64,000 nucleotides of DNA, from IMG/VR virus record IMGVR_UViG_3300025012_000027, positions 1 to 64,000 of that record. One strand, written 5' to 3'. The notes below the pieces were generated by a model. The model was not told where the DNA came from, searched no databases, and saw only the letters and a program-made list of their open reading frames with translations. Every line of letters begins with the position of its first letter. Position 1 is the stretch's first letter. Shown here piece after piece: positions 1-45,072 of this stretch. Made by a program: the position numbers and the translations under genes.

Positions 1-1
1 T

Positions 2-58
2 TATCACTCTGCCGCCATTCACTTTTATGACGCGGGCAACGCATACCCTAATTCTTAA
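2..58 (+). CDS. C-terminal end of an upstream RCC1-repeat protein (partial, begins before window)
   Basis: Frame from nt 2 reads YHSAAIHFYDAGNAYPNS*, matching the YHTAAI blade end of the two downstream RCC1 proteins. Confidence 0.6.
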   Translation, partial: YHSAAIHFYDAGNAYPNS

Positions 59-79
59 TCACATTAATGGAAAATAATT

Positions 80-733
80 ATGTTCGTAATCGTACACAAT
101 AACTCAGTAATTCTAGGGCCTATGAGATGGAATCGGTATAGGTTTGAAAACGTCATTCAGGAAGAATGTGAACTATCTGTATCATTACCATCCAGTAATG
201 AGAAAGATCCATTGTTGCTGTCAGCTGATGTACGAATATTACCAGTTGAACCTCTACCTCTTCCAGAATTCAATTCGAAGATCGAGTTTCTGCACGGTCC
301 ATTCTGGGAATTTACAGATCAAAAAGCTATATCATCATTCACAGTACAGCGACTCCCGATAGACGCCGTGAAAAACAAATTAATCAGCGTTTGCGCGGAT
401 GAACGTTGGCGCAGAGAATCGGTTGGTGTAAAAACTAATATTCAGGGAGCAGACATAACTGTAGATACTCGCCGTGGTAATCGGGATATATTTGTTCAGA
501 AGTACCTACTGATGAATGAAAGTGATACTGTTCGGTGGAAGTTTCCAGAAGAATGGGCAACACTCTCTAAAGTAGATCTAGCCCAAATCGTTTCAGCTGG
601 TGCTGGTTATATCCAATCGCAATTTGATTGGGAATCTAGTATGGTCGATTCTATAAATGCTTGCAGCACCCTCGAAGAATTGGATGCATTGGTTATCGTA
701 GAACCGGTCAACGAAAACCGTAGGGTAGTATAA
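80..733 (+). CDS. DUF4376-domain tail-fibre-associated protein
   Basis: C-terminal ERWRRESVGV..TVDTRRGNR..VRWKF..QSQFDWE..INACSTLEELDA pattern typical of DUF4376. Confidence 0.65.
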   Translation: MFVIVHNNSVILGPMRWNRYRFENVIQEECELSVSLPSSNEKDPLLLSADVRILPVEPLPLPEFNSKIEFLHGPFWEFTDQKAISSFTVQRLPIDAVKNKLISVCADERWRRESVGVKTNIQGADITVDTRRGNRDIFVQKYLLMNESDTVRWKFPEEWATLSKVDLAQIVSAGAGYIQSQFDWESSMVDSINACSTLEELDALVIVEPVNENRRVV

Positions 734-1941
734 TGCCAATTGGAATAACAACGGGGTTTAAAAACTCATCGGGGGAAGACATCGGGGAGAAACTCGTCCC
801 CAAGAGTTATTTGATTGACCGGTATCCAGAATTGGTTGATACGTTTCGTTTTTCTGGATTATGGATGTGGGGTCATAATAACTATGGCGGACTAGGTGAT
901 AACTCTGTCATCCATAAAAGTTCTCCAATACAAACTATCGCTGGTGGAACGAACTGGAAAACGGTTTCTGGTAGTGGATATCACACATCTGCCATAAAAA
1001 CTGACGGTACTTTGTGGACGTGGGGCCATAATAACTATGGACAATTAGGTGATAACACTATTGATAATAAAAGTTCTCCAGTACAAACTATTGCAGGTGG
1101 AACGAACTGGAAGCAAGTATCTAGCGGTTGGTTTCACACATCTGCCATAAAAACTGACGGTACTTTGTGGACGTGGGGTCTTAATAATAATGGTCAATTA
1201 GGTGATAACTCTGTCATCCGTAAAAGTTCTCCAATACAAACTGTTGCTGGAGGAACGAACTGGAAAACGGTTTCTGGTAGTATATATCATACGGCTGCTA
1301 TAAAAACTGACGGTACTTTATGGACATGGGGTCGTAATAACTATGGTCAACTAGGTGATAGCACTGTTGCTAATAAAAGTTCCACCGTGCAAACTATTGC
1401 TGGAGGAACGAACTGGAAACTGGTTGATTGTGGTGCACATCACACATCTGCTATAAAAACTGACGGTACTTTGTGGCTGTGGGGTTACAATGGATACGGT
1501 CAACTAGGTGATAGCACTGTTGCTAGTAAAAGTTCTCCAGTGCAAACTGTCGCTGGTGGAACGAACTGGAAGTTGGTTGCTGGTGGTGCATATCATACGG
1601 CTGCCATTAAAACCGATGGTACTTTATGGACATGGGGTCGTAATAACTATGGTCAACTAGGTGATAACACTGATGCTAATAAAAGTTCTCCAGTACAAAC
1701 TATTGCAGGTGGAACGAACTGGAAACTAGTGGCCGGTGGATCATATCACACATCTGCTATAAAAACCGATGGTACTTTATGGCTGTGGGGTTACAATGGA
1801 TACGGTCAACTAGGTGATAGCACTGTTGCTAATAAAAGTTCCACCGTGCAAACTATTGCTGGAGGAACGAACTGGAAACTGGTTGATTGTGGTGGTTATC
1901 ACACTATAGCCATACGAGACGATTCAGACGACTATATATGA
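733..1941 (+). CDS. RCC1-repeat (7-blade beta-propeller) protein, probable receptor-binding/fibre-tip protein
   Basis: Seven 51-aa repeats HTxAIKTDGTLWxWGxNxYGQLGDxT..KSSPVQTIAGGTNWK. Confidence 0.85.
   Translation: MPIGITTGFKNSSGEDIGEKLVPKSYLIDRYPELVDTFRFSGLWMWGHNNYGGLGDNSVIHKSSPIQTIAGGTNWKTVSGSGYHTSAIKTDGTLWTWGHNNYGQLGDNTIDNKSSPVQTIAGGTNWKQVSSGWFHTSAIKTDGTLWTWGLNNNGQLGDNSVIRKSSPIQTVAGGTNWKTVSGSIYHTAAIKTDGTLWTWGRNNYGQLGDSTVANKSSTVQTIAGGTNWKLVDCGAHHTSAIKTDGTLWLWGYNGYGQLGDSTVASKSSPVQTVAGGTNWKLVAGGAYHTAAIKTDGTLWTWGRNNYGQLGDNTDANKSSPVQTIAGGTNWKLVAGGSYHTSAIKTDGTLWLWGYNGYGQLGDSTVANKSSTVQTIAGGTNWKLVDCGGYHTIAIRDDSDDYI
862..1914 (+). repeat. 153-bp coding tandem repeat (7 units)
   Basis: Near-identical units at 153-bp period; 1345-1435 is identical to 1804-1894. 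Confidence 0.9.
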
Positions 1942-2435
1942 TACACCCACTCGTTAAAATAATCACGGTCGATGGGTTCTTCACCCACGAGCAGGCGAAT
2001 TCGCTAGTCGCGTCAACATACAACCTCGAGTATGTCTCAACCGAGTTTGGAAAAGAAATACCAAACTTTAATCTGATATCACCTAACTTCAATGAATCTG
2101 CTTCGGCGATGTTGAATACATCGATAGAAGTTGATGAATCTAGGTCCGGGTTCTTTAGGCTGCCTGAGAATTTTATACATTTCGAAGGATTCGATAGCAC
2201 AGATGAATGGGTGTTTGCTGTAGCTCTGCAACAATCTACGTTCAACGTATTCGAGCATAAATCTGGAGCAACTACGGCTTTGCACGGACATAAATATAAC
2301 TATCGAGACCTGTTCCAGTGGGATTTAAAAATTAACTATGTGTTAGATCCTGGGCAAGGCGTACTGTTCAGACCGTGGTTATTTCATTCGTTCGATACTG
2401 GACTGATCCAAACATTTAGGGTAACTGAACGATGA
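1938..2435 (+). CDS. 2OG-Fe(II) oxygenase-like / DUF6445-like protein
   Basis: IITVDGFF start, IHFE, GVLFRPWLFHS motifs; ATG 1938 overlaps upstream TGA (ATGA). Confidence 0.5.
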   Translation: MIHPLVKIITVDGFFTHEQANSLVASTYNLEYVSTEFGKEIPNFNLISPNFNESASAMLNTSIEVDESRSGFFRLPENFIHFEGFDSTDEWVFAVALQQSTFNVFEHKSGATTALHGHKYNYRDLFQWDLKINYVLDPGQGVLFRPWLFHSFDTGLIQTFRVTER

Positions 2436-3604
2436 CAATTAATTTTAGAACAACGATTCAAGATCCCACCGGGGCTGGTAGTGATTTAGGAGATCTTTTC
2501 ATTCCTAGATCACTGTTTAGTGATGCTGGATTATGGACGTGGGGCCGTAATAGCTATGGTCAGTTAGGTGATAGCACTGGTGCTAGTAAAAGCTCTCCAG
2601 TACAAACTATCGCCGGTGGTACGAACTGGAAGCTGGTTGCTGGTGGTCGATATCACACAGCCGCCATAAAAACCGATGGTACTTTATGGTCGTGGGGTCG
2701 TAATACCTATGGCGAACTAGGTGATAACACCATCGCCCATAAAAGCTCTCCAGTACAAACTATCGCTGGAGGAACTAACTGGAAACTGGTGGCTAGCGGG
2801 TGGTTGCACACAGCCGCAATTAAAACCGATGGTACTTTATGGACATGGGGATATAATTACTATGGTACACTCGGTGATAACACTATTGCTAATAAAAGCT
2901 CACCAGTACAAACTATCGCTGGAGGAACGAACTGGAAACTGGTAGCTGGTGGCCGATATCACACAGCCGCAATTAAAACCGATGGTACTTTATGGCTGTG
3001 GGGTCGCAATAACTATGGTCAACTAGGTGATAACACTCGCGTCAGTAAAAGCTCTCCTGTACAAACTATAGATGATGAAGGAACCAACTGGAAATCTGTT
3101 TCAGGCGGGACCGCCCACACAGCCGCAATTAAAACCGATGGTACTTTGTGGCTGTGGGGTACTAATTATTATGGTACACTCGGTGATGAAACTATCATCG
3201 ATAAAAGCTCTCCTATACAAACTGTCGCCGGTGGCACGAACTGGAAACTGGTAGCTAGTGGTGATTATTATACTGCTGCCATTAAAACTGACGGTACTTT
3301 ATGGACATGGGGTCGCAATAACTATGGCTCTCTCGGTGACAACACTATTGCTCATAAAAGTTCTCCAATACAAACTATCGCTGGAGGAACGAACTGGAAG
3401 CAGGTTGAATGTGGAACAGATTACATAGCCGCCATTAAAACTGATGGTACTTTATGGACGTGGGGGGCTAATTTCTATGGTATGCTAGGTGATAACACTG
3501 ACATCAGTAAAAGTTCTCCCGTACAAACTATCGCTGGTGGAACGAACTGGAAGTTGATTGGTGGTGGCATGATGCATACTGTAGCCATAAGAGACGATTC
3601 ATAG
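2432..3604 (+). CDS. Second RCC1-repeat beta-propeller protein
   Basis: Seven repeats of the same 51-aa unit as 733..1941. Confidence 0.85.
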   Translation: MTINFRTTIQDPTGAGSDLGDLFIPRSLFSDAGLWTWGRNSYGQLGDSTGASKSSPVQTIAGGTNWKLVAGGRYHTAAIKTDGTLWSWGRNTYGELGDNTIAHKSSPVQTIAGGTNWKLVASGWLHTAAIKTDGTLWTWGYNYYGTLGDNTIANKSSPVQTIAGGTNWKLVAGGRYHTAAIKTDGTLWLWGRNNYGQLGDNTRVSKSSPVQTIDDEGTNWKSVSGGTAHTAAIKTDGTLWLWGTNYYGTLGDETIIDKSSPIQTVAGGTNWKLVASGDYYTAAIKTDGTLWTWGRNNYGSLGDNTIAHKSSPIQTIAGGTNWKQVECGTDYIAAIKTDGTLWTWGANFYGMLGDNTDISKSSPVQTIAGGTNWKLIGGGMMHTVAIRDDS

Positions 3605-3609
3605 TAGCA

Positions 3610-3615
3610 TAAATA
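3610..3615 (+). promoter_or_regulatory. T4-type late promoter (TAAATA)
   Basis: CATAAATA in intergenic gap, 20 nt upstream of ATG 3636; gp55/gp33 are encoded in the window. Confidence 0.6.
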
Positions 3616-3635
3616 TAGTTTTACATTGGTATATT

Positions 3636-4199
3636 ATGAAAATAAATATTGGATCTGGTAGTAAGCGATATGATGGTATAATCAACATTGATTCTGATGC
3701 GGGGTCTAACCCAGATTTCGTTGTAAATCTCGAAACTGAGAATCTGCCGTTTGATGACAACAGTGTTGATTACGTCATGGCACATCACATTTTAGAGCAT
3801 TTAGGCGATGGATTCTTTCATTGCCTGAAAGAAATATATCGAGTGTGCAAACATGGTGCGATCATTGATGTGCGTGTCCCACATCCCCGACACGACACGT
3901 TCTTAATTGACCCCACACATAAACGCCCTATATATCCACATACGTTGGATATGTTTTCAAAGGCTCGTAATAAGAGAGACCTTGATAGCAACGGGTGTGA
4001 AACGCCGCTTGGATTTATCAATGATATTGACCTACAGGTGGTTGATCATAATTTTGTTTTAGACGAATACTGGATACAGAAATTCAAACATCTATCTGAG
4101 GATGAATGTGAGCATATTGCTAGATCTATGAATAACGTGATTCTCGAAATATCAATAAAACTGAAAGTGGTTAAGCAAAACAATACTCGCAGAGATTGA
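3636..4199 (+). CDS. Class I SAM-dependent methyltransferase (Methyltransf_11-like)
   Basis: INIGSG motif I, LPFDDNSVD, HILEHL, EIYRVCKHG, DPTH. Confidence 0.8.
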   Translation: MKINIGSGSKRYDGIINIDSDAGSNPDFVVNLETENLPFDDNSVDYVMAHHILEHLGDGFFHCLKEIYRVCKHGAIIDVRVPHPRHDTFLIDPTHKRPIYPHTLDMFSKARNKRDLDSNGCETPLGFINDIDLQVVDHNFVLDEYWIQKFKHLSEDECEHIARSMNNVILEISIKLKVVKQNNTRRD

Positions 4200-4206
4200 A
4201 TATACT

Positions 4207-5523
4207 ATGAATCCATTAGCAACAGTTGAGTTTTTTATACATATAAATCAGTTTGAAAAAGCTAAAATAGTTCTCGATTTATTAAAACCATATGCAAGAT
4301 CCGTGCAAGAGATTGATCAGTTAGGTAAGCTATATGCCGATATACGAGAATTTGCCGACACTCTCGAATTAGGGCAACGGATATATGAGTTAGTTGACCA
4401 CCCTCAAGCAAAGTATGATTCTAGAGTGAACATAATACGAGCATTGCTTAATCTGAATAAGCCAAATGAAGCTCTTGAACTCATTCTGATAAACGAACAA
4501 GAGCAGCCTGACGATCATCCAAATCAGATGGATAAGGCGATGTGTTTTTTCCTATTAGACCAAAAGGATTCTGGCGAAGCCATTCTTAGACAAATATTAT
4601 CTGAGCCGCACACTCAAGATATCGATAATCGGGTGAGGTTCAATCTTGGCACATATGACTTGCGCAACGGTAATTTTAAACAAGGCCTGCGAGAGGTTTT
4701 GCTAGGCGGCAGGAAACTTAACATATGGCATGAATTCAAGTTTCCAAAATCTCAATTGTGGGAAGGCAATCCGCAACCAGGCAAACGCATTCTCGTATGC
4801 GCTGAGGGTGGAATAGGAGATGAGATAATATCGGTTAGATTCATGAAGCATTTGCGCGATGCTGGGATGCTCCCGATTTGGTACACTGATAGAGAAGATA
4901 TTCGGACTATCTTCACTCGGAATGGTTTTGAAACAACCACTAACATAAGCATATTACCGGCCGACTGGTTATGGACGTATTCTATGCCTATACCATCATA
5001 TCTAGATCTATCAGAGGATGCTGTGTGGTATGGTCCATATATTTCACCTACCAATCAAACACCAAAATTATCCACTTCAGGAAAGAAGAAGATTGGTATA
5101 AAGTGTATGGGCAACCCTAAGTATGATCAAGATTTACATAGGACAGTACCTTTCATAGAATTGATAGACAGCATTCCAGATGAATATGAGATATACTCGT
5201 TTCATATAGATGAAGATTTCACCCACCCCAGAGTCATCCAGTTGAAAGATAAGATACACTCGTGGGATGATACCTTGGATTATATAACCCAAATGGATAT
5301 CATTGTTTCTAGCTGTACTTCTTTGATACATGCGGCGGGTGCTATGGGCAAATCATCGATCGTCATTGTGCCTATACTAACGTATTACACATGGGCAAAA
5401 CCTGGTCTGAGGTCTTTGTGGTATGGCGATAATTTACGGGTCTTGAGGCAGGTTGAATATGACAACTGGTCCGCTCCCCTTAATGAACTCAACAAAATAC
5501 TATGCCCGTCAAATACCGTATAA
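4207..5523 (+). CDS. TPR-repeat + glycosyltransferase family 9-like protein
   Basis: Helical N-terminus; WEG..GKRILVCAEGGIGDEI, MDIIVSSCTSLIHAAGAMG, WY..LRVLRQ motifs. Confidence 0.75.
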   Translation: MNPLATVEFFIHINQFEKAKIVLDLLKPYARSVQEIDQLGKLYADIREFADTLELGQRIYELVDHPQAKYDSRVNIIRALLNLNKPNEALELILINEQEQPDDHPNQMDKAMCFFLLDQKDSGEAILRQILSEPHTQDIDNRVRFNLGTYDLRNGNFKQGLREVLLGGRKLNIWHEFKFPKSQLWEGNPQPGKRILVCAEGGIGDEIISVRFMKHLRDAGMLPIWYTDREDIRTIFTRNGFETTTNISILPADWLWTYSMPIPSYLDLSEDAVWYGPYISPTNQTPKLSTSGKKKIGIKCMGNPKYDQDLHRTVPFIELIDSIPDEYEIYSFHIDEDFTHPRVIQLKDKIHSWDDTLDYITQMDIIVSSCTSLIHAAGAMGKSSIVIVPILTYYTWAKPGLRSLWYGDNLRVLRQVEYDNWSAPLNELNKILCPSNTV

Positions 5524-5858
5524 TAAATATCAACTTAACATCCTCGGTGTCCGATGCTCCTATAGCTGATGTGCCATGCAATGGGTGCATTAGGTGCTGT
5601 GAATTATTGACTCCCTTCCTAACCCCCGAAGAACTGAGTTCTGGCCTATACCCTATAAGTCTGATTCAACCGTCTGAAGATGCCGTGTTAGCAACACCTG
5701 ATATAGGCCCTCTGATTTCACTATATCGGAAGCCAGATGGTGGGTGTAGTATGCTAGTCGATGGACAGTGTACAATATATGACATTAGGCCAAAAGCGTG
5801 TCGACAATTCGATTGCCGTAAAGGACATCATCCCAAAATCCCCAACATGACGATATAA
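5502..5858 (+). CDS. YkgJ-family (CxxCxxCC) cysteine-cluster protein
   Basis: CNGCIRCC ... CSML..CTIYDIRPKACRQFDC. Confidence 0.8.
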   Translation: MPVKYRIININLTSSVSDAPIADVPCNGCIRCCELLTPFLTPEELSSGLYPISLIQPSEDAVLATPDIGPLISLYRKPDGGCSMLVDGQCTIYDIRPKACRQFDCRKGHHPKIPNMTI

Positions 5859-5859
5859 T

Positions 5860-6651
5860 ATGGAAAAAACTTATCACTTTCTTTCAGGACTTCCTAGATC
5901 AGGTTCCACCGTTTTAGCATCAATACTGAATCAAAATCCCGAGGTATATGTTACCCCAACTTCACCTATGCTAAACGTGGCAGTAAAAATGCAAGAGGCA
6001 TGGCGCAACGATCCCACGGTTAAAGCAAATTACTACGAAGAACAAGCGCGCGATTTGACTAAAGCTATCCTGCCAGCATTTTGGAAACACCGGCCTGAAT
6101 CTATTATCATCGATAAAGGAAGAGGGTGGGCTAAGAATATGCCAACCGCATCGGCACTGTTTGGTAAAAAAATTAAAGCTATCGTGATGACTCGTGATCT
6201 TCCTAGCATAATGGCTAGTTGGTTGACAATCATCAGAAACCAACCTGGGTGTTTTGTTGATAAGAATCTCTTGTTAACCGGGCATCTCGTTACAGATGAA
6301 AATAGAGTCGGTGAGATGTGGTTTAATATGGTTAAAGATTGTATGGAGGGGCTTCATCAAATAAAGAGAGAGGCGGCCGACCAAATTGTCATCGTAGAAT
6401 ATGACAAATTTATAGAAACCCCGATGGTAGAGCTTGATAGGATTGCAGACTTTCTGCAATTGCCGTCATTCGAGTATGACGTAAATACGATAGAAAATGA
6501 TACAGCTGATGATGATTTGATTGCATGGGGGTTTGAAGGATTACATACCATCAGGCCTGTGTTAGGGAAAACGTCAAAACACCCTCGTGAAGTTTTGGGT
6601 GATATGCTGTATTATCGATTCGTCGAACTTGAAAAACAATACATTCTTTAA
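5860..6651 (+). CDS. Sulfotransferase family protein
   Basis: 5'-PSB motif LSGLPRSGSTVLASILNQNP, IIDKGRGW, MTRDLPSIMAS. Confidence 0.85.
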   Translation: MEKTYHFLSGLPRSGSTVLASILNQNPEVYVTPTSPMLNVAVKMQEAWRNDPTVKANYYEEQARDLTKAILPAFWKHRPESIIIDKGRGWAKNMPTASALFGKKIKAIVMTRDLPSIMASWLTIIRNQPGCFVDKNLLLTGHLVTDENRVGEMWFNMVKDCMEGLHQIKREAADQIVIVEYDKFIETPMVELDRIADFLQLPSFEYDVNTIENDTADDDLIAWGFEGLHTIRPVLGKTSKHPREVLGDMLYYRFVELEKQYIL

Positions 6652-6657
6652 GTTTAT

Positions 6658-7092
6658 ATGAAAAAGATTCTCATTATGGGACTACCTGGATCTGGAAAAA
6701 CCTTTTTAGCGTCTGCTCTGAAAGATCGATTGATCGATTCGAACAAGACCGTTGACTGGTTTAACGCAGATGATATCAGGCGCAGATATGATGATTGGGA
6801 TTTTTCAACCGACGGTCGCATTAGACAGTCCGTGAGGATGGCACAGCTCGCCAATGAATCAGTATCTGATTTTGTAATTGCTGATTTTGTCGCACCGCTC
6901 ATAAAAATGAGGGAAAATTTCAATTCCGATTACACTATATGGGTTGACACGATCGATAAGAGCAGGTATCCAGATACGAATATAGCATTCATCCCGCCAA
7001 CGACGTATGATTTTAGAGTAACTGAGCAGAATTCTGACCATTGGGCTAGTATCATCGCAAATTCTATTCTAAGAGATCGGTGTTGGTTATAG
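6658..7092 (+). CDS. cysC: Adenylyl-sulfate (APS) kinase-like P-loop protein
   Basis: ILIMGLPGSGKT, NADDIR, DFSTDGRIRQ, ADFVAP; adjacent to the sulfotransferase. Confidence 0.75.
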   Translation: MKKILIMGLPGSGKTFLASALKDRLIDSNKTVDWFNADDIRRRYDDWDFSTDGRIRQSVRMAQLANESVSDFVIADFVAPLIKMRENFNSDYTIWVDTIDKSRYPDTNIAFIPPTTYDFRVTEQNSDHWASIIANSILRDRCWL

Positions 7093-7108
7093 TAGCAGCG
7101 TGAACGAC

Positions 7109-7203
7109 GCTTAAATAGTATGAGTAACTAATTGGATACCTTATGCGACTAACTCTAGAAGAAACACAATACCTGTTAGATGAATCTACTCAACATCTAA
7201 CCG
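7109..7203 (+). repeat. Copy 1 of late-promoter + 5'-gene repeat
   Basis: 92/95 nt identical to 15353-15447; contains TAAATA 7112-7117 and ATG 7143. Confidence 0.95.
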
Positions 7204-7244
7204 CGCGAGTTGCGGCAATCGATCCAGAAGGAGGTATACTGTGA
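7143..7244 (+). CDS. 33-aa chimeric mini-ORF (N-terminus of gene 15387 fused to unrelated tail); possibly a pseudogene/leader peptide
   Basis: MRLTLEETQYLLDESTQHLTARVAAIDPEGGIL*; its TGA overlaps the GTG start of 7241. Confidence 0.45.
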   Translation: MRLTLEETQYLLDESTQHLTARVAAIDPEGGIL

Positions 7245-7759
7245 AAGCAAGCTACATTTACATTCCGCTCATCGGCCTGTTCAGGGTATTTTTATCATTT
7301 ACTGCGCCAATAGTCGTACTGCTGGCCCTACCGTTTATCAAATGGGATAAAGAGCCTTCCGTTGGTCCACAAAGAACCAATCCTCCAACGCCCACGATCA
7401 TGGGCGATTTCCCGAACTGGCTCTCGTGGCTCAGTACTCCAGATCAACGATTACCATGTGATACAGGTATACCAACATGTAAAGCATGGGTAGATCGGTA
7501 TGGTAAGTGGGTAGCTGCTTGGTTATGGGCTGGAGTGCGAAATCAGTATTTCGGATTCGCTATATGGCTAGGCAACCAAACTTCCAACTATGCTCCCTAC
7601 GACATTGAAGGCTATTGGGAGCGTACCGACCAATATGGTACGATTTGGAGGTATCGGAAGACTTTTGGTAAGATCAGCATCATGACCGGATACAATGTTT
7701 ACGCTATGCTAGATGGATCTTTCCATACAGCGCCAATCCTCACAGTTAAACTTCGTTGA
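7241..7759 (+). CDS. Hypothetical membrane-associated phage protein
   Basis: GGAGG SD before GTG; hydrophobic N-terminus, Trp-rich (WLSWLSTPD, WLWAGVRN). Confidence 0.7.
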   Translation: MKASYIYIPLIGLFRVFLSFTAPIVVLLALPFIKWDKEPSVGPQRTNPPTPTIMGDFPNWLSWLSTPDQRLPCDTGIPTCKAWVDRYGKWVAAWLWAGVRNQYFGFAIWLGNQTSNYAPYDIEGYWERTDQYGTIWRYRKTFGKISIMTGYNVYAMLDGSFHTAPILTVKLR

Positions 7760-7781
7760 CATTATCATTACTGGCTGACAA

Positions 7782-7864
7782 CTTAAATAGTAAGAGTAAC
7801 TAATTGGGATACCTCATGCAACTAACTCTAGAAGACACGCGACAGCTAACCGAGGAACTGCTGC
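7782..7864 (+). repeat. Copy 2 (diverged, 24-nt in-frame deletion) of late-promoter + 5'-gene repeat
   Basis: cttaaatagtaagagtaactaattgggatacctcatgcaactaactctagaaga...gctaaccgaggaactgctgc aligns to 15354 onward. Confidence 0.9.
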
Positions 7865-7908
7865 GGGCGAAAACAACTTCTCGAATCGGTGCTCGATGTA
7901 TCAAGTAA
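7816..7908 (+). CDS. 30-aa mini-ORF derived from the N-terminus of gene 15387
   Basis: MQLTLEDTRQLTEELLRAKTTSRIGARCIK*. Confidence 0.4.
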   Translation: MQLTLEDTRQLTEELLRAKTTSRIGARCIK

Positions 7909-7922
7909 ATTTGGAGTAAAAT

Positions 7923-8552
7923 ATGAATATTGACTTTACCTATGCAATAACAAGCGTCAATCACGCAACAAAAACTATGATGGTATCGTATTCTGCCACC
8001 AATTACCCAACGGTATCCAAAGAGGTGCGCATACCATGGCGTGAAGAAGATCTCGATATCGTATTGCGAGAGTATGCTCCGTACGGCGTGTGGTGGGCAT
8101 ATAATAAGCCAACTAAAGATATTGTTGTAGGTACTAAAGGATTGATCAACTCTCAAAATAAGCCTGCTGTAAAGGTAATTCCACAAACTGATGTAAACAC
8201 CGTTAAAGCAGAGCAAATATCTAAAATTGCGCAATCTAGATATCTGTATGAGACGAGTGGTATAAATATAAACGGCACTCGATTCAAAACGGATCGCGAA
8301 TCGCAGGCAGCTATCACATCAGCATTTATCAGTCTATCGCAGGGATTATTGACTACGGTAGATTGGAAAACTGAACCTTCTGTATGGATTACGTTAGATT
8401 TGCAGAAAATTACTGATGTCTACAATGCAGTTATGACTAAAGTGCAATTGGGGCATACTACAGAAAAAGAATTGGTCACATCTATCAATAACGTCGATGC
8501 CAAATTAGACAACGCTATCAAACTCATTGAGGATATCGTATGGCCTCAATGA
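7923..8552 (+). CDS. DUF4376-domain tail-fibre-associated protein
   Basis: IAQSRYLYETSGININGTRFKTDRESQAAI..VDWKT..IVWP. Confidence 0.75.
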   Translation: MNIDFTYAITSVNHATKTMMVSYSATNYPTVSKEVRIPWREEDLDIVLREYAPYGVWWAYNKPTKDIVVGTKGLINSQNKPAVKVIPQTDVNTVKAEQISKIAQSRYLYETSGININGTRFKTDRESQAAITSAFISLSQGLLTTVDWKTEPSVWITLDLQKITDVYNAVMTKVQLGHTTEKELVTSINNVDAKLDNAIKLIEDIVWPQ

Positions 8553-9448
8553 GTTTGTATGTGCCTTTGCCGGATCAAGAAGTCGGCATTCTATCATATA
8601 AGCCAATATTGGATGAGTTAGACATCACAATTACGTCCATTAAAAATACATCGGCTTATGCTTTTCCTGTATCAAACAGAGGAACTAGCTACTGTGGGGA
8701 TCATCCTAAATACATGTCACTTGAGAGTCTAAATACTCTGACATATAAGAGTGAGCTACATAAAACAGGCATACTTACCATTCCGACAGAAATTGTTCAA
8801 GAAATTGGAGATACTTCTTTATATTTTTTCAAGCCAAATTCTATATTTAGCAACGAACTTGTAAGACGCCCAAGGGTTGCGAGCCCTATCGCCCAGTATG
8901 AAGTGACGTTTTCTGTAAATGAATTCAATGAGATCTATGTGTTTAATACATCGAGACACATATTTAATAATGCAGATACGTCTGGGGCTTGTGTACAGAC
9001 ATCTGAAAATAGTGTAGAATCCATCTATATGATAGATCAAGTGAGACAAGCTGTTATTAGATTAAACGTTCGTGGTGGCATACATAATGTGCAGTTTATA
9101 TATTATAATAACGAATTAGTTTTAATAGACTGGAATGCTAGACCACCAACAGTTCTTACCGAAGGTTTCGCAGCATATAACCATCCTAATATCATTAGTA
9201 CGGTAAGACACGCACTCGGACTCCCAATTCTGCCAAGAGAACCTATGTCTGTTATTTTTAGAGATTATTCGGATAATCCTATACCCGTTTCAAAACGGGA
9301 TCTTATCGTTAGTTTTGGACTACTTCCTAGAAAAGTTTGGGGTAAAGGGATTGATTATCCATTCATACGAGTCAGTGGGCTTGGATCTTCGGATGAAGAG
9401 CTGAATTCGAGATTTGATCAAATGGAACTGGCAGTATTTAGTAATTAA
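8540..9448 (+). CDS. ATP-grasp-fold protein (divergent)
   Basis: FFKP, YEVTF, GIHNVQFIYYNNELVLIDWNARP resemble ATP-grasp motifs. Confidence 0.6.
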   Translation: MASMSLYVPLPDQEVGILSYKPILDELDITITSIKNTSAYAFPVSNRGTSYCGDHPKYMSLESLNTLTYKSELHKTGILTIPTEIVQEIGDTSLYFFKPNSIFSNELVRRPRVASPIAQYEVTFSVNEFNEIYVFNTSRHIFNNADTSGACVQTSENSVESIYMIDQVRQAVIRLNVRGGIHNVQFIYYNNELVLIDWNARPPTVLTEGFAAYNHPNIISTVRHALGLPILPREPMSVIFRDYSDNPIPVSKRDLIVSFGLLPRKVWGKGIDYPFIRVSGLGSSDEELNSRFDQMELAVFSN

Positions 9449-10537: not shown

Positions 10538-11527
10538 ATGACAATAAAAACTTCCGGGTCTCTTTCATTAAATGAAATCAATTCTGAATTTGGGAGAGGG
10601 TATAACTTAAACGCATATAGAGGCACTTCCTATTGGAATAGTAACGCTACTCTGGGTACGTTTTCAAGCGTAGCTATTTCAATCAATGATTTTTTTGGTA
10701 AGGCTCTATCTCGACCACCCATCACCGCTCAAGTATTGGTTGTGGGTGGTGGTGGAGGCGGCGGTTCTGGAACACATGATTCTGTTGGCGGTGGAGGGGG
10801 CGGTGGAGGGGGCGGTCAATTCTTATCATTTGATGTAACATTATACCCCGGTGCTCCAGCTTCAATTAGTATAGGGGGTGGTGGTGCCGGTGGATACTAT
10901 TACATCTACTATACCGGCCCTTATGGTGACCAAGCTAATTATGCGTATGTAGCAGGGAATACTGGTGGATCCAGTTCTGCAGTATTCAATGGATCTACAT
11001 ACACTGCGGTAGGGGGGCTATATGGTCACCAAAGATGGTATAATGGTGAAAGCTTTACTGTTGACCCAACCCCATATGTTGGTGGGGCAGGTGGTTCGGG
11101 TAATGGCGGGGGTGGGTATGCATCTGCAGGTGGATCAGACGGTATTAGAGCAGGCGGGGGTGGTGGTGGTATAGATGATCAATCGACAGCTGGAGTAGGC
11201 GGAGCGGGTCCGCTGTGGTTTAATGGGTCTAGATATTCGGGTGGTGGTGGTGGTGGTGCTGATGGGTCCGGTCAAGCTTCGGGTGGCGCAGGTGGCGGCG
11301 GAACTGGCGGGTCATCTATGAATGGAACGGCAGGCGCAGCCAATACCGGTGGTGGCGGAGGTGGTGGTGGGTCATCGGGTTTTGTAACCAATGCAGGGGC
11401 CGGTGGCTCAGGCATAGTGATCATTAGATATGTTAGCAGTTTCGCATTCTTCAGTGGTGGGTCAGCGTATTCATCTGGTGGCTACATATACCATGTGTTT
11501 ACGTCTAATGCGTCATTTACAACATAA
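10538..11527 (+). CDS. Glycine-rich tail-fibre adhesin (gp38-like architecture)
   Basis: N-terminal SGSLSLNEINSEFG..ISINDFFGK anchor; many poly-Gly runs; GSGIVIIRY..YHVFTS end. Confidence 0.7.
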   Translation: MTIKTSGSLSLNEINSEFGRGYNLNAYRGTSYWNSNATLGTFSSVAISINDFFGKALSRPPITAQVLVVGGGGGGGSGTHDSVGGGGGGGGGGQFLSFDVTLYPGAPASISIGGGGAGGYYYIYYTGPYGDQANYAYVAGNTGGSSSAVFNGSTYTAVGGLYGHQRWYNGESFTVDPTPYVGGAGGSGNGGGGYASAGGSDGIRAGGGGGGIDDQSTAGVGGAGPLWFNGSRYSGGGGGGADGSGQASGGAGGGGTGGSSMNGTAGAANTGGGGGGGGSSGFVTNAGAGGSGIVIIRYVSSFAFFSGGSAYSSGGYIYHVFTSNASFTT

Positions 11528-43561: not shown

Positions 43562-43978
43562 ATGGCTCAAAACACGTCACCTATTTTCCCGCTTATTCCT
43601 AGAGTGTCTTGGAATACCACTGCTATTACTACGGCGGTCACTGCCAAAGATGGCACAGGAACAGTTAGTAGTATCTTTACAGCAGATTCGGTTGATGGTT
43701 CGCGAGTCGATTACTTGAAAGTACGCGCCTTGGGGACCAATGTTGCTACGGTAATGCGAGTGTTCATAAACAATGGTCAGGTTAATAGTACGCCGGCTAA
43801 TAATGTTTTGTTCATGGAGAGAACTATTCCAGCAACTACGATTTCAGAGACCTCAGAACTAGCAGATAATTTCATCCCGTTGAATATTTCGTTACCAGCT
43901 GGTTACCAGATTAATGTAACTATCGGCACCTCCGTTGCTGCTGGGTTAATGGTTACTGCTATCGGAGGAGATTACTAA
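43562..43978 (+). CDS. Tail-fibre-associated structural protein
   Basis: MAQNTSPIF..GGDY; coupled within the fibre operon. Confidence 0.6.
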   Translation: MAQNTSPIFPLIPRVSWNTTAITTAVTAKDGTGTVSSIFTADSVDGSRVDYLKVRALGTNVATVMRVFINNGQVNSTPANNVLFMERTIPATTISETSELADNFIPLNISLPAGYQINVTIGTSVAAGLMVTAIGGDY

Positions 43979-45072
43979 TGTTCCCTAGTAGCCCGCGAGT
44001 TCGGGATAATGTAAAGGTCATTCGCCTTGGAACGGTTAGCCATATATCGCTGGCAGAAGACGATCCAGATACGATCATACTTGAAGTGTTTAACACATCG
44101 TTCGATGGATCTAAGATTGTTTTGCCATTAACGGCTACTATTGGGAAGGTGTTTAAGTTTGCATTAGTCACGGATAAGATATCTAATCCGACGATGTCAA
44201 CATCCTATGTTGACATCGTCGTTCCACAATCCAGTGGCGCAGTGAATGTTGATTGGCGTATGTTTTCTGGGCAAAGACCAGAATTTGTATATTGTTCTTC
44301 TGGGTGGCATTCGTCAGCCGGTGGCGCTCTAACTAATATTGGATCGAATAACACCACAGATATTTCCATCGGGGATAATGCTAATGGAAGCTATGGTGGG
44401 GTATCGATAGGCAGGGGTTCATCTGGTCATACAAACGGATCATCTTTTGGACAAGGTGCCGTTGGTCATACAAACGGATCATCTTTTGGACAAGGTGCCG
44501 TTGGTCATACAAACGGATCATCTTTTGGACAAGGTGCAGTTGGTCATACAAACGGAACTGCGATTGGATACCGTTCAAATACAAATGATCAGGACAAAGC
44601 TGTTGCATTAGGATATTATTCTACAGCATATCGTTATCGAGAACTTGTTAAGTCGGCAGACGGCGAAGCCACTTCTCTACAATCGTGGAGCATGGTGAAT
44701 TGGTATACAGACACCACCAACGCGACCGCAACTGAAGCATTGTTAGGGGGAACTGCTGGGAAATATTGTGTCTTGCTAAATAACTCTGCGGTTCAATTTA
44801 ATATACAGATCATAGCAGGGGTAACCGGTGGAGGAAATACATCTAGCTGGACAATTTCTGGGGCGATAAAGAGAGGCTCGACCGCGGCATATACCTCGTT
44901 GGTAGGGGTGCCAGTAGTAATGATGACGGGTCAAGACGCAGGTGCATCTTCGTGGAATGTCTCTGTCTCAGCAGACATTGTCAATGGTTCGTTAAAACTT
45001 ACTGTAACAGGTGCAGCAGGAACAACAATACGCTGGAATGCTACTGCGACACTTTCTGAAATGAGATTCTAA
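43978..45072 (+). CDS. Tail fibre with YadA-head-like repeats
   Basis: SIG/SFG/AIG/ALG 13-aa repeats. Confidence 0.65.
   Translation: MFPSSPRVRDNVKVIRLGTVSHISLAEDDPDTIILEVFNTSFDGSKIVLPLTATIGKVFKFALVTDKISNPTMSTSYVDIVVPQSSGAVNVDWRMFSGQRPEFVYCSSGWHSSAGGALTNIGSNNTTDISIGDNANGSYGGVSIGRGSSGHTNGSSFGQGAVGHTNGSSFGQGAVGHTNGSSFGQGAVGHTNGTAIGYRSNTNDQDKAVALGYYSTAYRYRELVKSADGEATSLQSWSMVNWYTDTTNATATEALLGGTAGKYCVLLNNSAVQFNIQIIAGVTGGGNTSSWTISGAIKRGSTAAYTSLVGVPVVMMTGQDAGASSWNVSVSADIVNGSLKLTVTGAAGTTIRWNATATLSEMRF
44425..44556 (+). repeat. 39-bp coding tandem repeat (3 full + 1 partial)
   Basis: ggtcatacaaacggatcatcttttggacaaggtgc(c/a)gtt at 44425, 44464, 44503, partial at 44542. Confidence 0.95.

What the first reader, a model, noticed from the sequence alone, without database searches (positions are those of the whole stretch)
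733..3604. RCC1 propellers built from homogenised 153-bp blades with hypervariable loops and mosaic blades
Seen: 14 blades in two genes share a near-invariant DNA scaffold, while a few positions (WGxNxYGx, GDxTxxx, GGxxH) vary strongly. Blade 7 of gene 733 is a mosaic: 1780-1831 equals 1474-1525 (blade 5) and 1804-1894 equals 1345-1435 (blade 4). Blades 1 and 3 share TCTGTCATCC. Variable codons after WG and before KSS almost all end in T/C. Inference: ongoing gene conversion or unequal crossover shuffles binding loops among blades and paralogues, giving a recombination-based diversifier of a receptor-binding surface without a reverse transcriptase.
Basis: partly seen in the sequence, partly recalled or inferred. 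Interest (0 to 1): 0.62.

Follow-up and report, generated by a model that had tools for sequence, protein, structure and literature searches.

The report
Phage RCC1 propellers evolving in concert
A T4-like phage from groundwater carries three neighbouring genes for seven-bladed RCC1-type propeller proteins next to its tail-fibre genes; their blades keep one rigid scaffold, vary on one face and swap pieces by ordinary recombination, which is a known way for binding proteins to evolve and not a new diversity machine.

Summary

A third paralogue, gene Z, is split by the contig ends. All three lie just downstream of the tail-fibre genes of a 216-kb T4-like phage.

- **Variable face:** about 15 of 51 blade positions vary. 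They sit in the two loops that lie on one face.
- **Selection:** scaffold codons have dN/dS of about 0.06. Loop codons have 0.6-0.8.
- **Concerted evolution:** the non-repeat leaders are orthologous between phages, yet blades cluster by genome.
- **Recent exchange tracts:** blade A7 is a mosaic of A5 and A4, and genes Z and B share at least 136 nt.
- **A related pair:** in two near-identical relatives, one whole blade array has been replaced.

The genome holds no reverse transcriptase and no template copy.

The "near-invariant DNA scaffold" is overstated, since about 42% of synonymous sites differ. Outside A7 the recombination signal is weak. Most loop variants are unique, so shuffling did not make them. 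Near-clonal relatives show no SNP excess in these genes.

The A7 mosaic rests on one short-read assembly. A receptor-binding role is inferred from context only.

Verdict: concerted evolution of a repetitive phage propeller family, a new member of a known kind.

The parts
1..58 (+). 3' end of a third RCC1 gene (gene Z). Frame 2 reads YHSAAIHFYDAGNAYPNS then a stop. Its 5' part lies at the other contig end (G000 215809-216115).
   Evidence: The same C-terminal motif HTAAIHFYDA ends L010 gene 1. An X3 contig joins a 36-nt blade sequence to window position 1.
80..733 (+). DUF4376 protein of 217 aa, conserved between genes Z and A in relatives.
   Evidence: Pfam DUF4376 at 2e-07. phrog_10508 'tail fiber protein' at 4e-11. 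Synteny in 11 loci.
733..1941 (+). RCC1 gene A: a 42-aa leader plus seven 51-aa blades.
   Evidence: AlphaFold2 pLDDT 87.3, pTM 0.85, 28 strands. Foldseek matches UVR8, HERC2 and RCC1 at TM 0.8-0.9.
859..1929 (+). Blades A1-A7, 7 x 153 nt.
1777..1894 (+). Mosaic part of blade A7. 1780-1831 is identical to A5 (1474-1525). 1804-1894 is identical to A4 (1345-1435).
   Evidence: Seen in one assembly only.
1938..2435 (+). ORF X, 165 aa, of unknown family. It overlaps gene A and gene B by ATGA, and relatives keep it between the same two genes.
   Evidence: No Pfam or PHROG match. tblastn finds it in L010, L014, L013, L019, L011 and L012. Overlaps shown.
2432..3604 (+). RCC1 gene B: a 33-aa leader plus seven blades. 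B4 has one extra codon.
2648..2783 (+). Tract identical between gene B (end of B1 through codon 33 of B2) and gene Z.
   Evidence: The contig's last 103 nt equal 2648-2750. X4 contig record 17 covers 2602-2783 and carries exactly the six gene-Z differences, all at or before 2647.
3636..4199 (+). SAM-dependent methyltransferase-like protein, a conserved neighbour.
   Evidence: Pfam Methyltransf_11 at 9e-09. Synteny.
4207..5523 (+). TPR protein with a Rossmann-like C-terminal domain. It is the most constant neighbour of the RCC1 genes.
   Evidence: tblastn hits in at least 25 loci. AlphaFold2 pLDDT 92. Best Foldseek matches are SPINDLY and OGT, with TM of only 0.30-0.38.
5860..7092 (+). Sulfotransferase (5860-6651) and an APS-kinase-like P-loop protein (6658-7092).
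   Evidence: Pfam Sulfotransfer_3 at 4e-14 and APS_kinase at 6e-09.

Best explanation
The window opens inside a cassette of three paralogous genes (Z, A, B). Each encodes a short unique leader followed by a closed seven-bladed RCC1-like beta-propeller. The cassette lies directly downstream of the tail-fibre genes of a 216-kb T4-like myovirus related to Synechococcus phage S-SRM01.

Shown:
- Each 51-residue blade has four strands. Purifying selection holds the scaffold almost fixed at the protein level.
- About 15 positions are free to vary. They lie in the S1-S2 and S3-S4 loops, which lie on the same face of the disc.
- The 21 repeats of 153 nt are substrates for general homologous recombination.
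- Gene conversion within and between the three genes has partly homogenised the DNA. It leaves occasional long identical tracts: A5 and A4 into A7, and Z with B.
- In a related pair of near-identical phages, one entire blade array has been replaced.

Inferred:
- New loop residues arise by ordinary point substitution and persist because the loops are under relaxed or diversifying selection.
- Conversion then moves whole loops or blades between positions and paralogues.
- The propellers are virion-associated adhesins or accessory receptor-binding proteins that bind through the variable face.
- The seven-blade count is kept because only in-register, non-reciprocal exchanges give a closed propeller.
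For: - Fold and family.
- One-face variation: 9 of 17 positions in the S1-S2 and S3-S4 loops have three or more residues, against 0 of 11 in the opposite loops (Fisher p=0.004). Positions 6, 8, 19, 40 and 41 align with UVR8 W94, D96, D107 and the W-R of GWRHT.
- Selection: scaffold dN/dS is 0.06 and the variable codons give 0.63-0.80.
- Family trait: the same positions vary in 206 distinct blades from 20 loci.
- Concerted evolution: codon identity at shared residues is 0.67 within this genome and 0.79 within S-SRM01, against 0.34-0.52 between genomes and 0.34 expected. Blades cluster by genome, with 13 label changes against 50.9 when shuffled. The leaders pair across genomes instead: Z with L010 g1, A with g2, B with g3.
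- Exchange tracts. Relatives show them too.
- Array replacement: L010 and L018 have about 2 SNPs in 7.7 kb of flank, but the g3 array is wholly different and carries 72-nt and 45-nt tracts of g1.
- No RT and no extra blade copies.
- Tail context: tail-fibre PHROGs and a Peptidase_S74 chaperone protein lie just upstream. S-SRM01 has the same order after its long tail fibre gene.
- Virion precedent: gene A matches phrog_4219 at 1e-49, and three W70 proteins of that PHROG were found in virions by mass spectrometry (PMC11370258). An RCC1-like structural protein is reported in phage GAP32 (PMC5259590).
Against: - Virion location and receptor binding were not tested for this phage or for S-SRM01.
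- PHROGs files the family under DNA metabolism by name only.
- The neighbours downstream are enzymes, not structural genes.
- The recombination signal in this genome rests largely on one blade: PHI p=0.04 without A7 and p=0.12 for gene B alone.
- The A7 arrangement is seen in one short-read assembly, which broke inside gene Z.
- Loop dN/dS is below 1 by the crude pooled estimate, and dS is near saturation.
- Genome-specific codon usage could add to the clustering by genome.
- A search for RecA (PF00154) in the genome found nothing. A phage-encoded recombinase was therefore not shown, although T4 UvsX is known to be divergent.
Confidence: 0.62

Rival explanations
1. Fresh amplification without conversion. 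Each lineage rebuilt its propellers recently by amplifying a single blade, and the blades then diverged only by point mutation. Their similarity would then reflect youth, not exchange.
For: Highly repetitive propellers, including RCC1/BLIP-II types and a few viral ones, are explained this way in PMC9218822. Homogeneity varies smoothly across loci, from 0.40 to 0.82. L018 g3 looks newly homogenised.
Against: The three-gene, seven-blade layout and the gene-specific leaders and tails are shared by diverged phages. Homogeneity is as high between genes as within them. Tracts with sharp borders such as A7 and Z/B are not expected from divergence alone.
Confidence: 0.12
2. The A7 mosaic is a chimeric path through a tangled assembly graph and not a real sequence.
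For: The contig breaks inside the repeats of gene Z. The Logan contigs are fragmented across the repeats, and none listed bridges 1779-1895. The diagnostic arrangement occurs only in the source contig among JGI metagenome contigs. All blades are in register, so a chimera would stay in frame.
Against: The assembly passes the 91-nt repeat and stops only at a repeat of at least 136 nt. That is what an assembler able to span about 100 nt would do (inference). The Z/B tract is confirmed by a contig from another run. An X3 contig from a second study shows the 1860-1902 sequence in gene Z as well. Comparable outlier blade pairs exist in the isolate genome S-SRM01 and in other loci.
Confidence: 0.17
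3. A targeted mutagenic system, DGR-like or otherwise, writes the variable codons. The NNY codons would be its footprint.
For: Codons 6, 17, 18 and 19 end in T or C in every blade, as in adenine-mutagenised AAY codons. Y-ending codons exceed genome usage at variable sites, 81 against 64 expected.
Against: No RVT_1 match even at E<=1. No blade copy lies outside the three genes. AAT, AAA and AAC codons at positions 7, 20, 32 and 34 never vary. T and C are mixed within columns. Relatives lack the rule. Near-clonal pairs show no SNP excess in RCC1 genes.
Confidence: 0.02
4. The propellers are not virion adhesins. They act inside or on the host as binders or inhibitors of host proteins, as BLIP-II inhibits beta-lactamase. 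Alternatively, they are substrates or partners of the neighbouring modification enzymes.
For: Eukaryotic and bacterial RCC1-like domains are mostly soluble protein binders. The constant neighbours are a TPR protein, a methyltransferase, a sulfotransferase and a kinase-like protein. No signal or anchor domain was identified.
Against: The position directly after the tail-fibre genes is conserved. A tail-fibre-like DUF4376 gene is interleaved and translationally coupled. Members of the same PHROG were found in W70 virions (PMC11370258). Replacement of a whole array between near-clonal phages is typical of host-range genes.
Confidence: 0.25

Closest known systems
Highly repetitive RCC1/BLIP-II beta-propellers (Pereira and Lupas 2022, PMC9218822)
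   Same: Seven-bladed RCC1-type propellers whose blades are far more alike than in classical RCC1. That survey lists RCC1/BLIP-II as about 10% of all highly repetitive propellers, with a few viral members.
   Different: The survey reads such proteins as freshly amplified from one blade. Here conserved synteny and orthologous leaders show an old 3 x 7 array kept similar by conversion. The tail-fibre context and the one-face variability are not described there.
HNWD/NLR WD40 repeats of Podospora anserina (Chevanne et al. 2010, PMC2873952)
   Same: A propeller with highly conserved repeats controls recognition specificity. The repeats undergo concerted evolution within and between paralogues. Repeat rearrangements create new repeat variants without any reverse transcriptase.
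   Different: The fold is WD40, not RCC1, and the organism is a fungus, not a phage. Repeat number there is free, whereas here it stays at seven per propeller. Instability was measured experimentally there and is only inferred here.
Mosaic T-even tail-fibre adhesins gp37 and gp38 (from my own knowledge: Tetart et al. 1998; Trojet et al. 2011)
   Same: These are phage host-range proteins in which conserved motifs flank hypervariable segments and serve as recombination sites.
   Different: Exchange there is mainly between phages and in a different fold. Here the partners are repeats and paralogues within one genome, plus one whole-array replacement between strains.
Diversity-generating retroelements, such as Bordetella phage BPP-1 Mtd
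   Same: A phage binding surface is varied at a few codons, and variable codons avoid stops (NNY).
   Different: A DGR needs a reverse transcriptase and a template repeat, and it changes only adenine-templated bases. None of these is present.
UVR8, RCC1, HERC2 RLD and BLIP-II structures
   Same: Same fold: TM 0.79-0.87 to UVR8, 0.84/0.92 to HERC2 RLD3 and 0.81 to RCC1. The hypervariable positions align with the UVR8 dimer-interface residues (their roles are from my own knowledge).
   Different: There is no evidence of GEF, photoreceptor or inhibitor activity. Blade-to-blade identity is far higher, about 75% at the protein level.
Virion RCC1-like proteins of E. coli phage W70 and of jumbo phage GAP32
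   Same: Multi-copy RCC1-like phage genes. W70_237-239 belong to phrog_4219, which gene A matches at 1e-49, and were detected in virions (PMC11370258). GAP32's GAP_001 is a structural protein by mass spectrometry (PMC5259590).
   Different: These are different phage groups. No analysis of blade homogeneity or variable faces is reported there. Direct similarity to them was not measured here.

Membership tests
RCC1-like repeat beta-propeller (Pfam RCC1 PF00415, WD40_RLD PF25390) | Repeats of about 50 residues that score above the curated cut-offs | tested here: met
   RCC1 scores 230 and 246 bits against a cut-off of 21.7, with seven stretches each. WD40_RLD scores 263 and 404 bits against a cut-off of 150.
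RCC1-like repeat beta-propeller (Pfam RCC1 PF00415, WD40_RLD PF25390) | Closed seven-bladed propeller with four strands per blade | tested here: met
   The AlphaFold2 model has 28 strands, pLDDT 87.3 and pTM 0.85. Foldseek probability is 1.00 to UVR8, HERC2, RPGR and RCC1.
RCC1 guanine-nucleotide exchange factors | Ran or GTPase binding and exchange activity | not tested
   Nothing suggests it, and no GTPase partner was sought.
Diversity-generating retroelement | Reverse transcriptase gene in the element or genome | tested here: not met
   No RVT_1 match at E<=1 in the 216-kb genome, while the control genomes did match. About 0.7 kb of gene Z is missing from the contig.
Diversity-generating retroelement | Template repeat paired with a variable repeat, differing only at template adenines | tested here: not met
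   All 16 RCC1 matches lie inside the three genes. Variation occurs at all four bases, and adenine-rich codons 7, 20, 32 and 34 are invariant.
Concerted evolution of repeats by gene conversion | Paralogues and repeats are older than the split between lineages | tested here: met
   Leaders pair across genomes, with scores of 118, 130 and 71 against 18-41 between paralogues. The same gene order occurs in S-SRM01, L010, L014 and others.
Concerted evolution of repeats by gene conversion | Repeats resemble each other within a genome more than their counterparts between genomes, including at silent sites | tested here: met
   0.67 against 0.34-0.43; 13 label changes against 50.9 shuffled, 0 of 200 shuffles as low. 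Codon-bias differences between genomes were not modelled.
Concerted evolution of repeats by gene conversion | Discrete identical tracts with sharp borders | tested here: met
   A4/A7 91 nt, A5/A7 52 nt, Z/B at least 136 nt. The signal without A7 is marginal (PHI p=0.04).
Phage receptor-binding protein or adhesin | Encoded in the tail-fibre or baseplate module | tested here: met
   Directly after tail-fibre PHROG genes and an S74 chaperone protein. Same position in S-SRM01.
Phage receptor-binding protein or adhesin | Present in the virion and binds a host surface receptor | not testable with these tools
   The only evidence is a precedent from phrog_4219 proteins in W70 virions (PMC11370258).
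Sites under diversifying selection | dN/dS above 1 at the variable codons | tested here: inconclusive
   Pooled Nei-Gojobori estimates give 0.63-0.80 here, 1.35 in S-SRM01 and 1.09 in L012. dS is near saturation, and recombination rules out tree-based tests.

The most novel reading that the evidence does not exclude
The three propeller genes would form a phage-borne repertoire of 21 interchangeable blades. In-register conversion among them, driven by the phage's own recombination during replication, would produce new combinations of binding loops at measurable frequency within a single population. That would make it a reverse-transcriptase-free host-range diversifier, analogous to the fungal HNWD repeats. 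The whole-array replacement seen between L010 and L018 would be its product.
Probability: 0.15. Interest if true: 0.7.

Novelty: new member of a known kind. Interest (0 to 1): 0.48.

Why it matters
If the adhesin reading holds, this widespread family would be a second scaffold for host recognition in T4-like aquatic phages, beside fibrous tail fibres. At least 43 viral contigs carry it, usually with 2-4 copies each and always with the same variable positions.

The protein resembles an engineered binder: a consensus scaffold with about 15 free positions per blade on one face. The family gives a natural case for asking how repeat homogenisation and loop diversification balance in a closed repeat fold that must keep exactly seven units.

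S-SRM01 is a cultured relative in which this could be tested. There is also a practical point. These genes break short-read assemblies, so their variation is probably under-reported in viromes.

Tried and rejected
- **DGR or targeted mutagenesis.** Rejected: no RT, no template, invariant A-rich codons, and the NNY rule is absent in relatives.
- **The T/C-ending codons as a coding rule.** Over all variable codons it is mostly an effect of amino-acid make-up plus a mild gene-wide bias. The scaffold also shows 149 Y-ending codons against 133 expected. The 100% at codons 6 and 17-19 is real, but the blades are not independent samples, so I attach no mechanism to it.
- **Third positions more conserved than first and second in variable codons.** This would show recent origin plus positive selection. 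It holds only for codon 19, so I dropped it.
- **Read support.** Read laying had only Logan contigs, which are fragmented in the repeats. None listed bridges the A7 mosaic, and no variants appear in gene A.
- **Metagenome scan.** A scan for the A6-A7 arrangement found only the source contig.
- **Megablast of 1-8000 against phage records.** No match.
- **RecA (PF00154) search of the genome.** No match, so a phage-encoded recombinase was not shown.
- **ORF X (1938-2435) as a 2OG oxygenase like S-SRM01 gp339.** No significant similarity, and no Pfam or PHROG match.
- **Three-dimensional mapping of variable sites.** Model coordinates are not exposed, so I used strand topology and the UVR8 alignment instead.


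Full report
**1. What is there**

The window is the first 64 kb of a 216,115-bp viral contig. Public runs that hold it come from groundwater and sediment metagenomes in two studies.

ORFs 733-1941 (gene A, 402 aa) and 2432-3604 (gene B, 390 aa) each pass the Pfam cut-offs for RCC1 and for the RCC1-like domain, with seven repeats. Tandem Repeats Finder reports a 153-nt period, 6.8 copies and 79% or 75% matches.

An AlphaFold2 model of gene A was built on 41 homologues. It has pLDDT 87.3, pTM 0.85 and exactly 28 strands. Its best structural matches are UVR8, the HERC2 and HERC1 RCC1-like domains, RPGR, RCC1 and BLIP-II.

**2. A third gene and the context**

A family search of the whole genome finds 16 RCC1 repeats. 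All lie in genes A and B or in a third gene, Z, whose start is at 215809 and which runs off the contig end. Window 2-58 encodes the tail of that gene. The same C-terminal motif ends the first RCC1 gene of locus L010. The assembler therefore broke inside these repeats, and about 0.7 kb is missing.

Upstream of Z lie tail-fibre PHROG proteins and a small protein with a Peptidase_S74 chaperone domain. Between Z and A lies a DUF4376 protein that matches a tail-fibre PHROG. The DUF4376 gene, A, ORF X and B overlap by one to four bases.

The nearest described phage is the freshwater Synechococcus myovirus S-SRM01 (57% identity to A). It has three RCC1 genes in the same place, right after its long tail fibre distal subunit. 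The window also holds T4-type baseplate genes, and the other end of the genome holds a T4 neck protein. There is no psbA.

**3.

All the exact matches are correct.
- A7 equals A5 over 52 nt and A4 over 91 nt.
- The two tracts overlap in 28 nt that A4 and A5 share.
- Permuting the order of polymorphic sites gives global p=0.0005 for A4/A7 and p=0.0075 for A5/A7.

The variable positions are 3, 6, 8, 11, 15, 17-19, 35 and 37-42.

"Near-invariant DNA scaffold" is too strong.
- Blades differ at 18-54 of 153 nt.
- 42% of synonymous sites differ in scaffold codons.
- The invariance is mainly at the protein level. L010 has blades 62-65% identical in protein, but its codon identity at shared residues is only 0.42, which is close to the between-genome values.

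**4. One face**

In a beta-meander, successive loops alternate between the two faces of the disc. The model puts strands at blade positions 1-5, 20-25, 33-38 and 42-47. The S1-S2 and S3-S4 loops therefore share one face, and the S2-S3 and S4-S1' loops share the other.
- Nine of 17 positions in the first pair of loops have three or more residues among the 14 blades.
- None of 11 positions in the second pair does (Fisher p=0.004).

In the alignment to UVR8, positions 6, 8 and 19 fall on W94, D96 and D107. Positions 40-41 fall on the W-R of the GWRHT motifs. From my own knowledge, these residues form the UVR8 dimer interface on one face.

The same positions are the most variable across 206 distinct blades from 20 loci.

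**5. Selection**

Pooled Nei-Gojobori estimates give dN/dS of 0.06 for scaffold codons and 0.63-0.80 for variable codons. In S-SRM01 and L012 the variable codons reach 1.35 and 1.09. This shows a tenfold contrast but does not prove positive selection in this genome. Loop residues are not conserved by blade position between phages.

**6. Concerted evolution**

- The non-repeat leaders pair across genomes: Z with L010 g1 and gp335, A with g2 and gp337, B with g3 and gp344. The three paralogues therefore predate the divergence of these phages.
- A tree of scaffold-only DNA nevertheless groups blades by genome. It needs 13 label changes, against 50.9 for shuffled labels.
- Codon identity at shared residues is 0.67 within this genome and 0.79 within S-SRM01. 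It is 0.34-0.52 between genomes and 0.34 expected from this genome's codon usage.
- Homogeneity is as high between genes as within them.
- Across the family it ranges from 0.40 to 0.82, which suggests episodic homogenisation.

**7. Recent tracts**

Besides A7, the last 103 nt of the contig (gene Z) equal 2648-2750 in gene B. A Logan contig from another run covers 2602-2783 and carries exactly the six Z-specific bases, all at or before 2647. Z and B are therefore identical for at least 136 nt, after 22 differences in the preceding 117 nt. This tract includes the first variable loop of B2.

Relatives show similar outliers.
- L010 has a 67-nt exact run between g1 and g3.
- L012 has a blade pair that differs at 8 nt, against a median of 53.

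**8. A natural experiment in relatives**

L010 and L018 come from different metagenomes. They differ at 2 positions in the first 7.7 kb and at 4 in the last 3.9 kb. From 7742 to 8859, however, the whole blade array of g3 (the orthologue of gene B) is different, while its leader and last four residues are kept.

The L018 array is internally more uniform, with 0.71 nt identity between blades against 0.45. It also carries 72-nt and 45-nt exact tracts of paralogue g1.

Four other near-identical comparisons show 0-1 SNPs in their RCC1 genes. The pattern is occasional recombinational replacement, not steady hypermutation.

**9. What it is not**

The genome has no reverse transcriptase and no blade copy outside the three genes. 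The T/C-ending rule is complete at codons 6 and 17-19 here but absent in relatives. Over all variable codons it largely reflects the abundance of N, H, Y, D and S.

**10. Limits**

- The A7 mosaic exists in one short-read assembly. The reads tool offered only Logan contigs, which fragment in the repeats. A scan of JGI metagenome contigs found only the source contig.
- The contig passes the 91-nt repeat and breaks at the repeat of at least 136 nt. That fits an assembler able to span about 100 nt, but this is inference.
- Without A7 the recombination signal is marginal, and in gene B it is not significant.
- Function is inferred from context. The precedents are members of the same PHROG in W70 virions (PMC11370258) and an RCC1-like structural protein in GAP32 (PMC5259590).

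**11. Comparison and verdict**

Highly repetitive RCC1/BLIP-II propellers, including a few viral ones, have been catalogued and read as fresh amplifications (PMC9218822). Conserved repeats with a variable recognition surface, concerted evolution between paralogues and repeat reshuffling are established for the fungal HNWD genes (PMC2873952).

This locus is a phage RCC1 example of that kind. The recombination reading is partly supported. A dedicated or ongoing diversifier is not shown.

Noticed in passing
L010 7742-8859 versus L018 7742-8850: Two viral contigs are about 99.95% identical in 11.6 kb of flanks but differ in the entire seven-blade array of one RCC1 gene. The L018 array is more homogenised and carries 72-nt and 45-nt tracts of a paralogue.
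   Followed up: yes
window 4207-5523: A TPR protein co-occurs with the RCC1 genes in at least 25 related loci. In six loci its C-terminal domain is fused to a sulfotransferase domain. Its confident model is nearest to the TPR plus GT-B protein glycosyltransferases SPINDLY and OGT, but TM is only 0.30-0.38, so a role in modifying the propellers is only a lead.
   Followed up: partly
window 3636-7092: A methyltransferase, the TPR protein, a CxxCxxCC zinc/iron-domain protein, a sulfotransferase and an APS-kinase-like protein follow the RCC1 genes. S-SRM01 has a similar enzyme set interleaved with its RCC1 genes.
   Followed up: partly
window 1938-2435: ORF X (165 aa) has no family match. It overlaps gene A and gene B by ATGA, and seven related loci keep it between the same two genes.
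   Followed up: partly
G000 216013-216115 and window 1-58: The contig ends split a third RCC1 gene, so the record called linear is a circular or permuted genome that the assembler broke in the repeats. Many related contigs also end at or near their RCC1 genes.
   Followed up: yes
L017 (ORFs of 1129, 818 and 784 aa), L019 2994-, L024 2293-: Some relatives have RCC1 ORFs with 13-19 blades. They look like two or three propellers fused in one chain.
   Followed up: no
L021 2195-2603 versus L022: All 22 differences between two otherwise identical contigs fall in the N-terminal, non-repeat part of an RCC1-containing ORF.
   Followed up: no
window 44424-44556: A 39-nt tandem repeat (3.4 copies, 98% matches) encodes GHTNGSSFGQGAV repeats in ORF 43978-45072, which has no PHROG match.
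   Followed up: no
window 10538-11527: A very glycine-rich ORF (329 aa, long G runs) contains the 12-nt repeat at 10787-10816.
   Followed up: no
whole genome G000: This relative of Kyanoviridae phage S-SRM01 has no psbA and comes from groundwater and sediment samples, so its host need not be a cyanobacterium.
   Followed up: partly
run X4, joined before window 2708: A contig joins a blade start found nowhere in the assembled genome to the gene B scaffold from 2708 on. That start ends GGTTATGGGGATACAATGCA and encodes LWLWGYNA. It probably comes from the missing part of gene Z or from a co-occurring strain.
   Followed up: no
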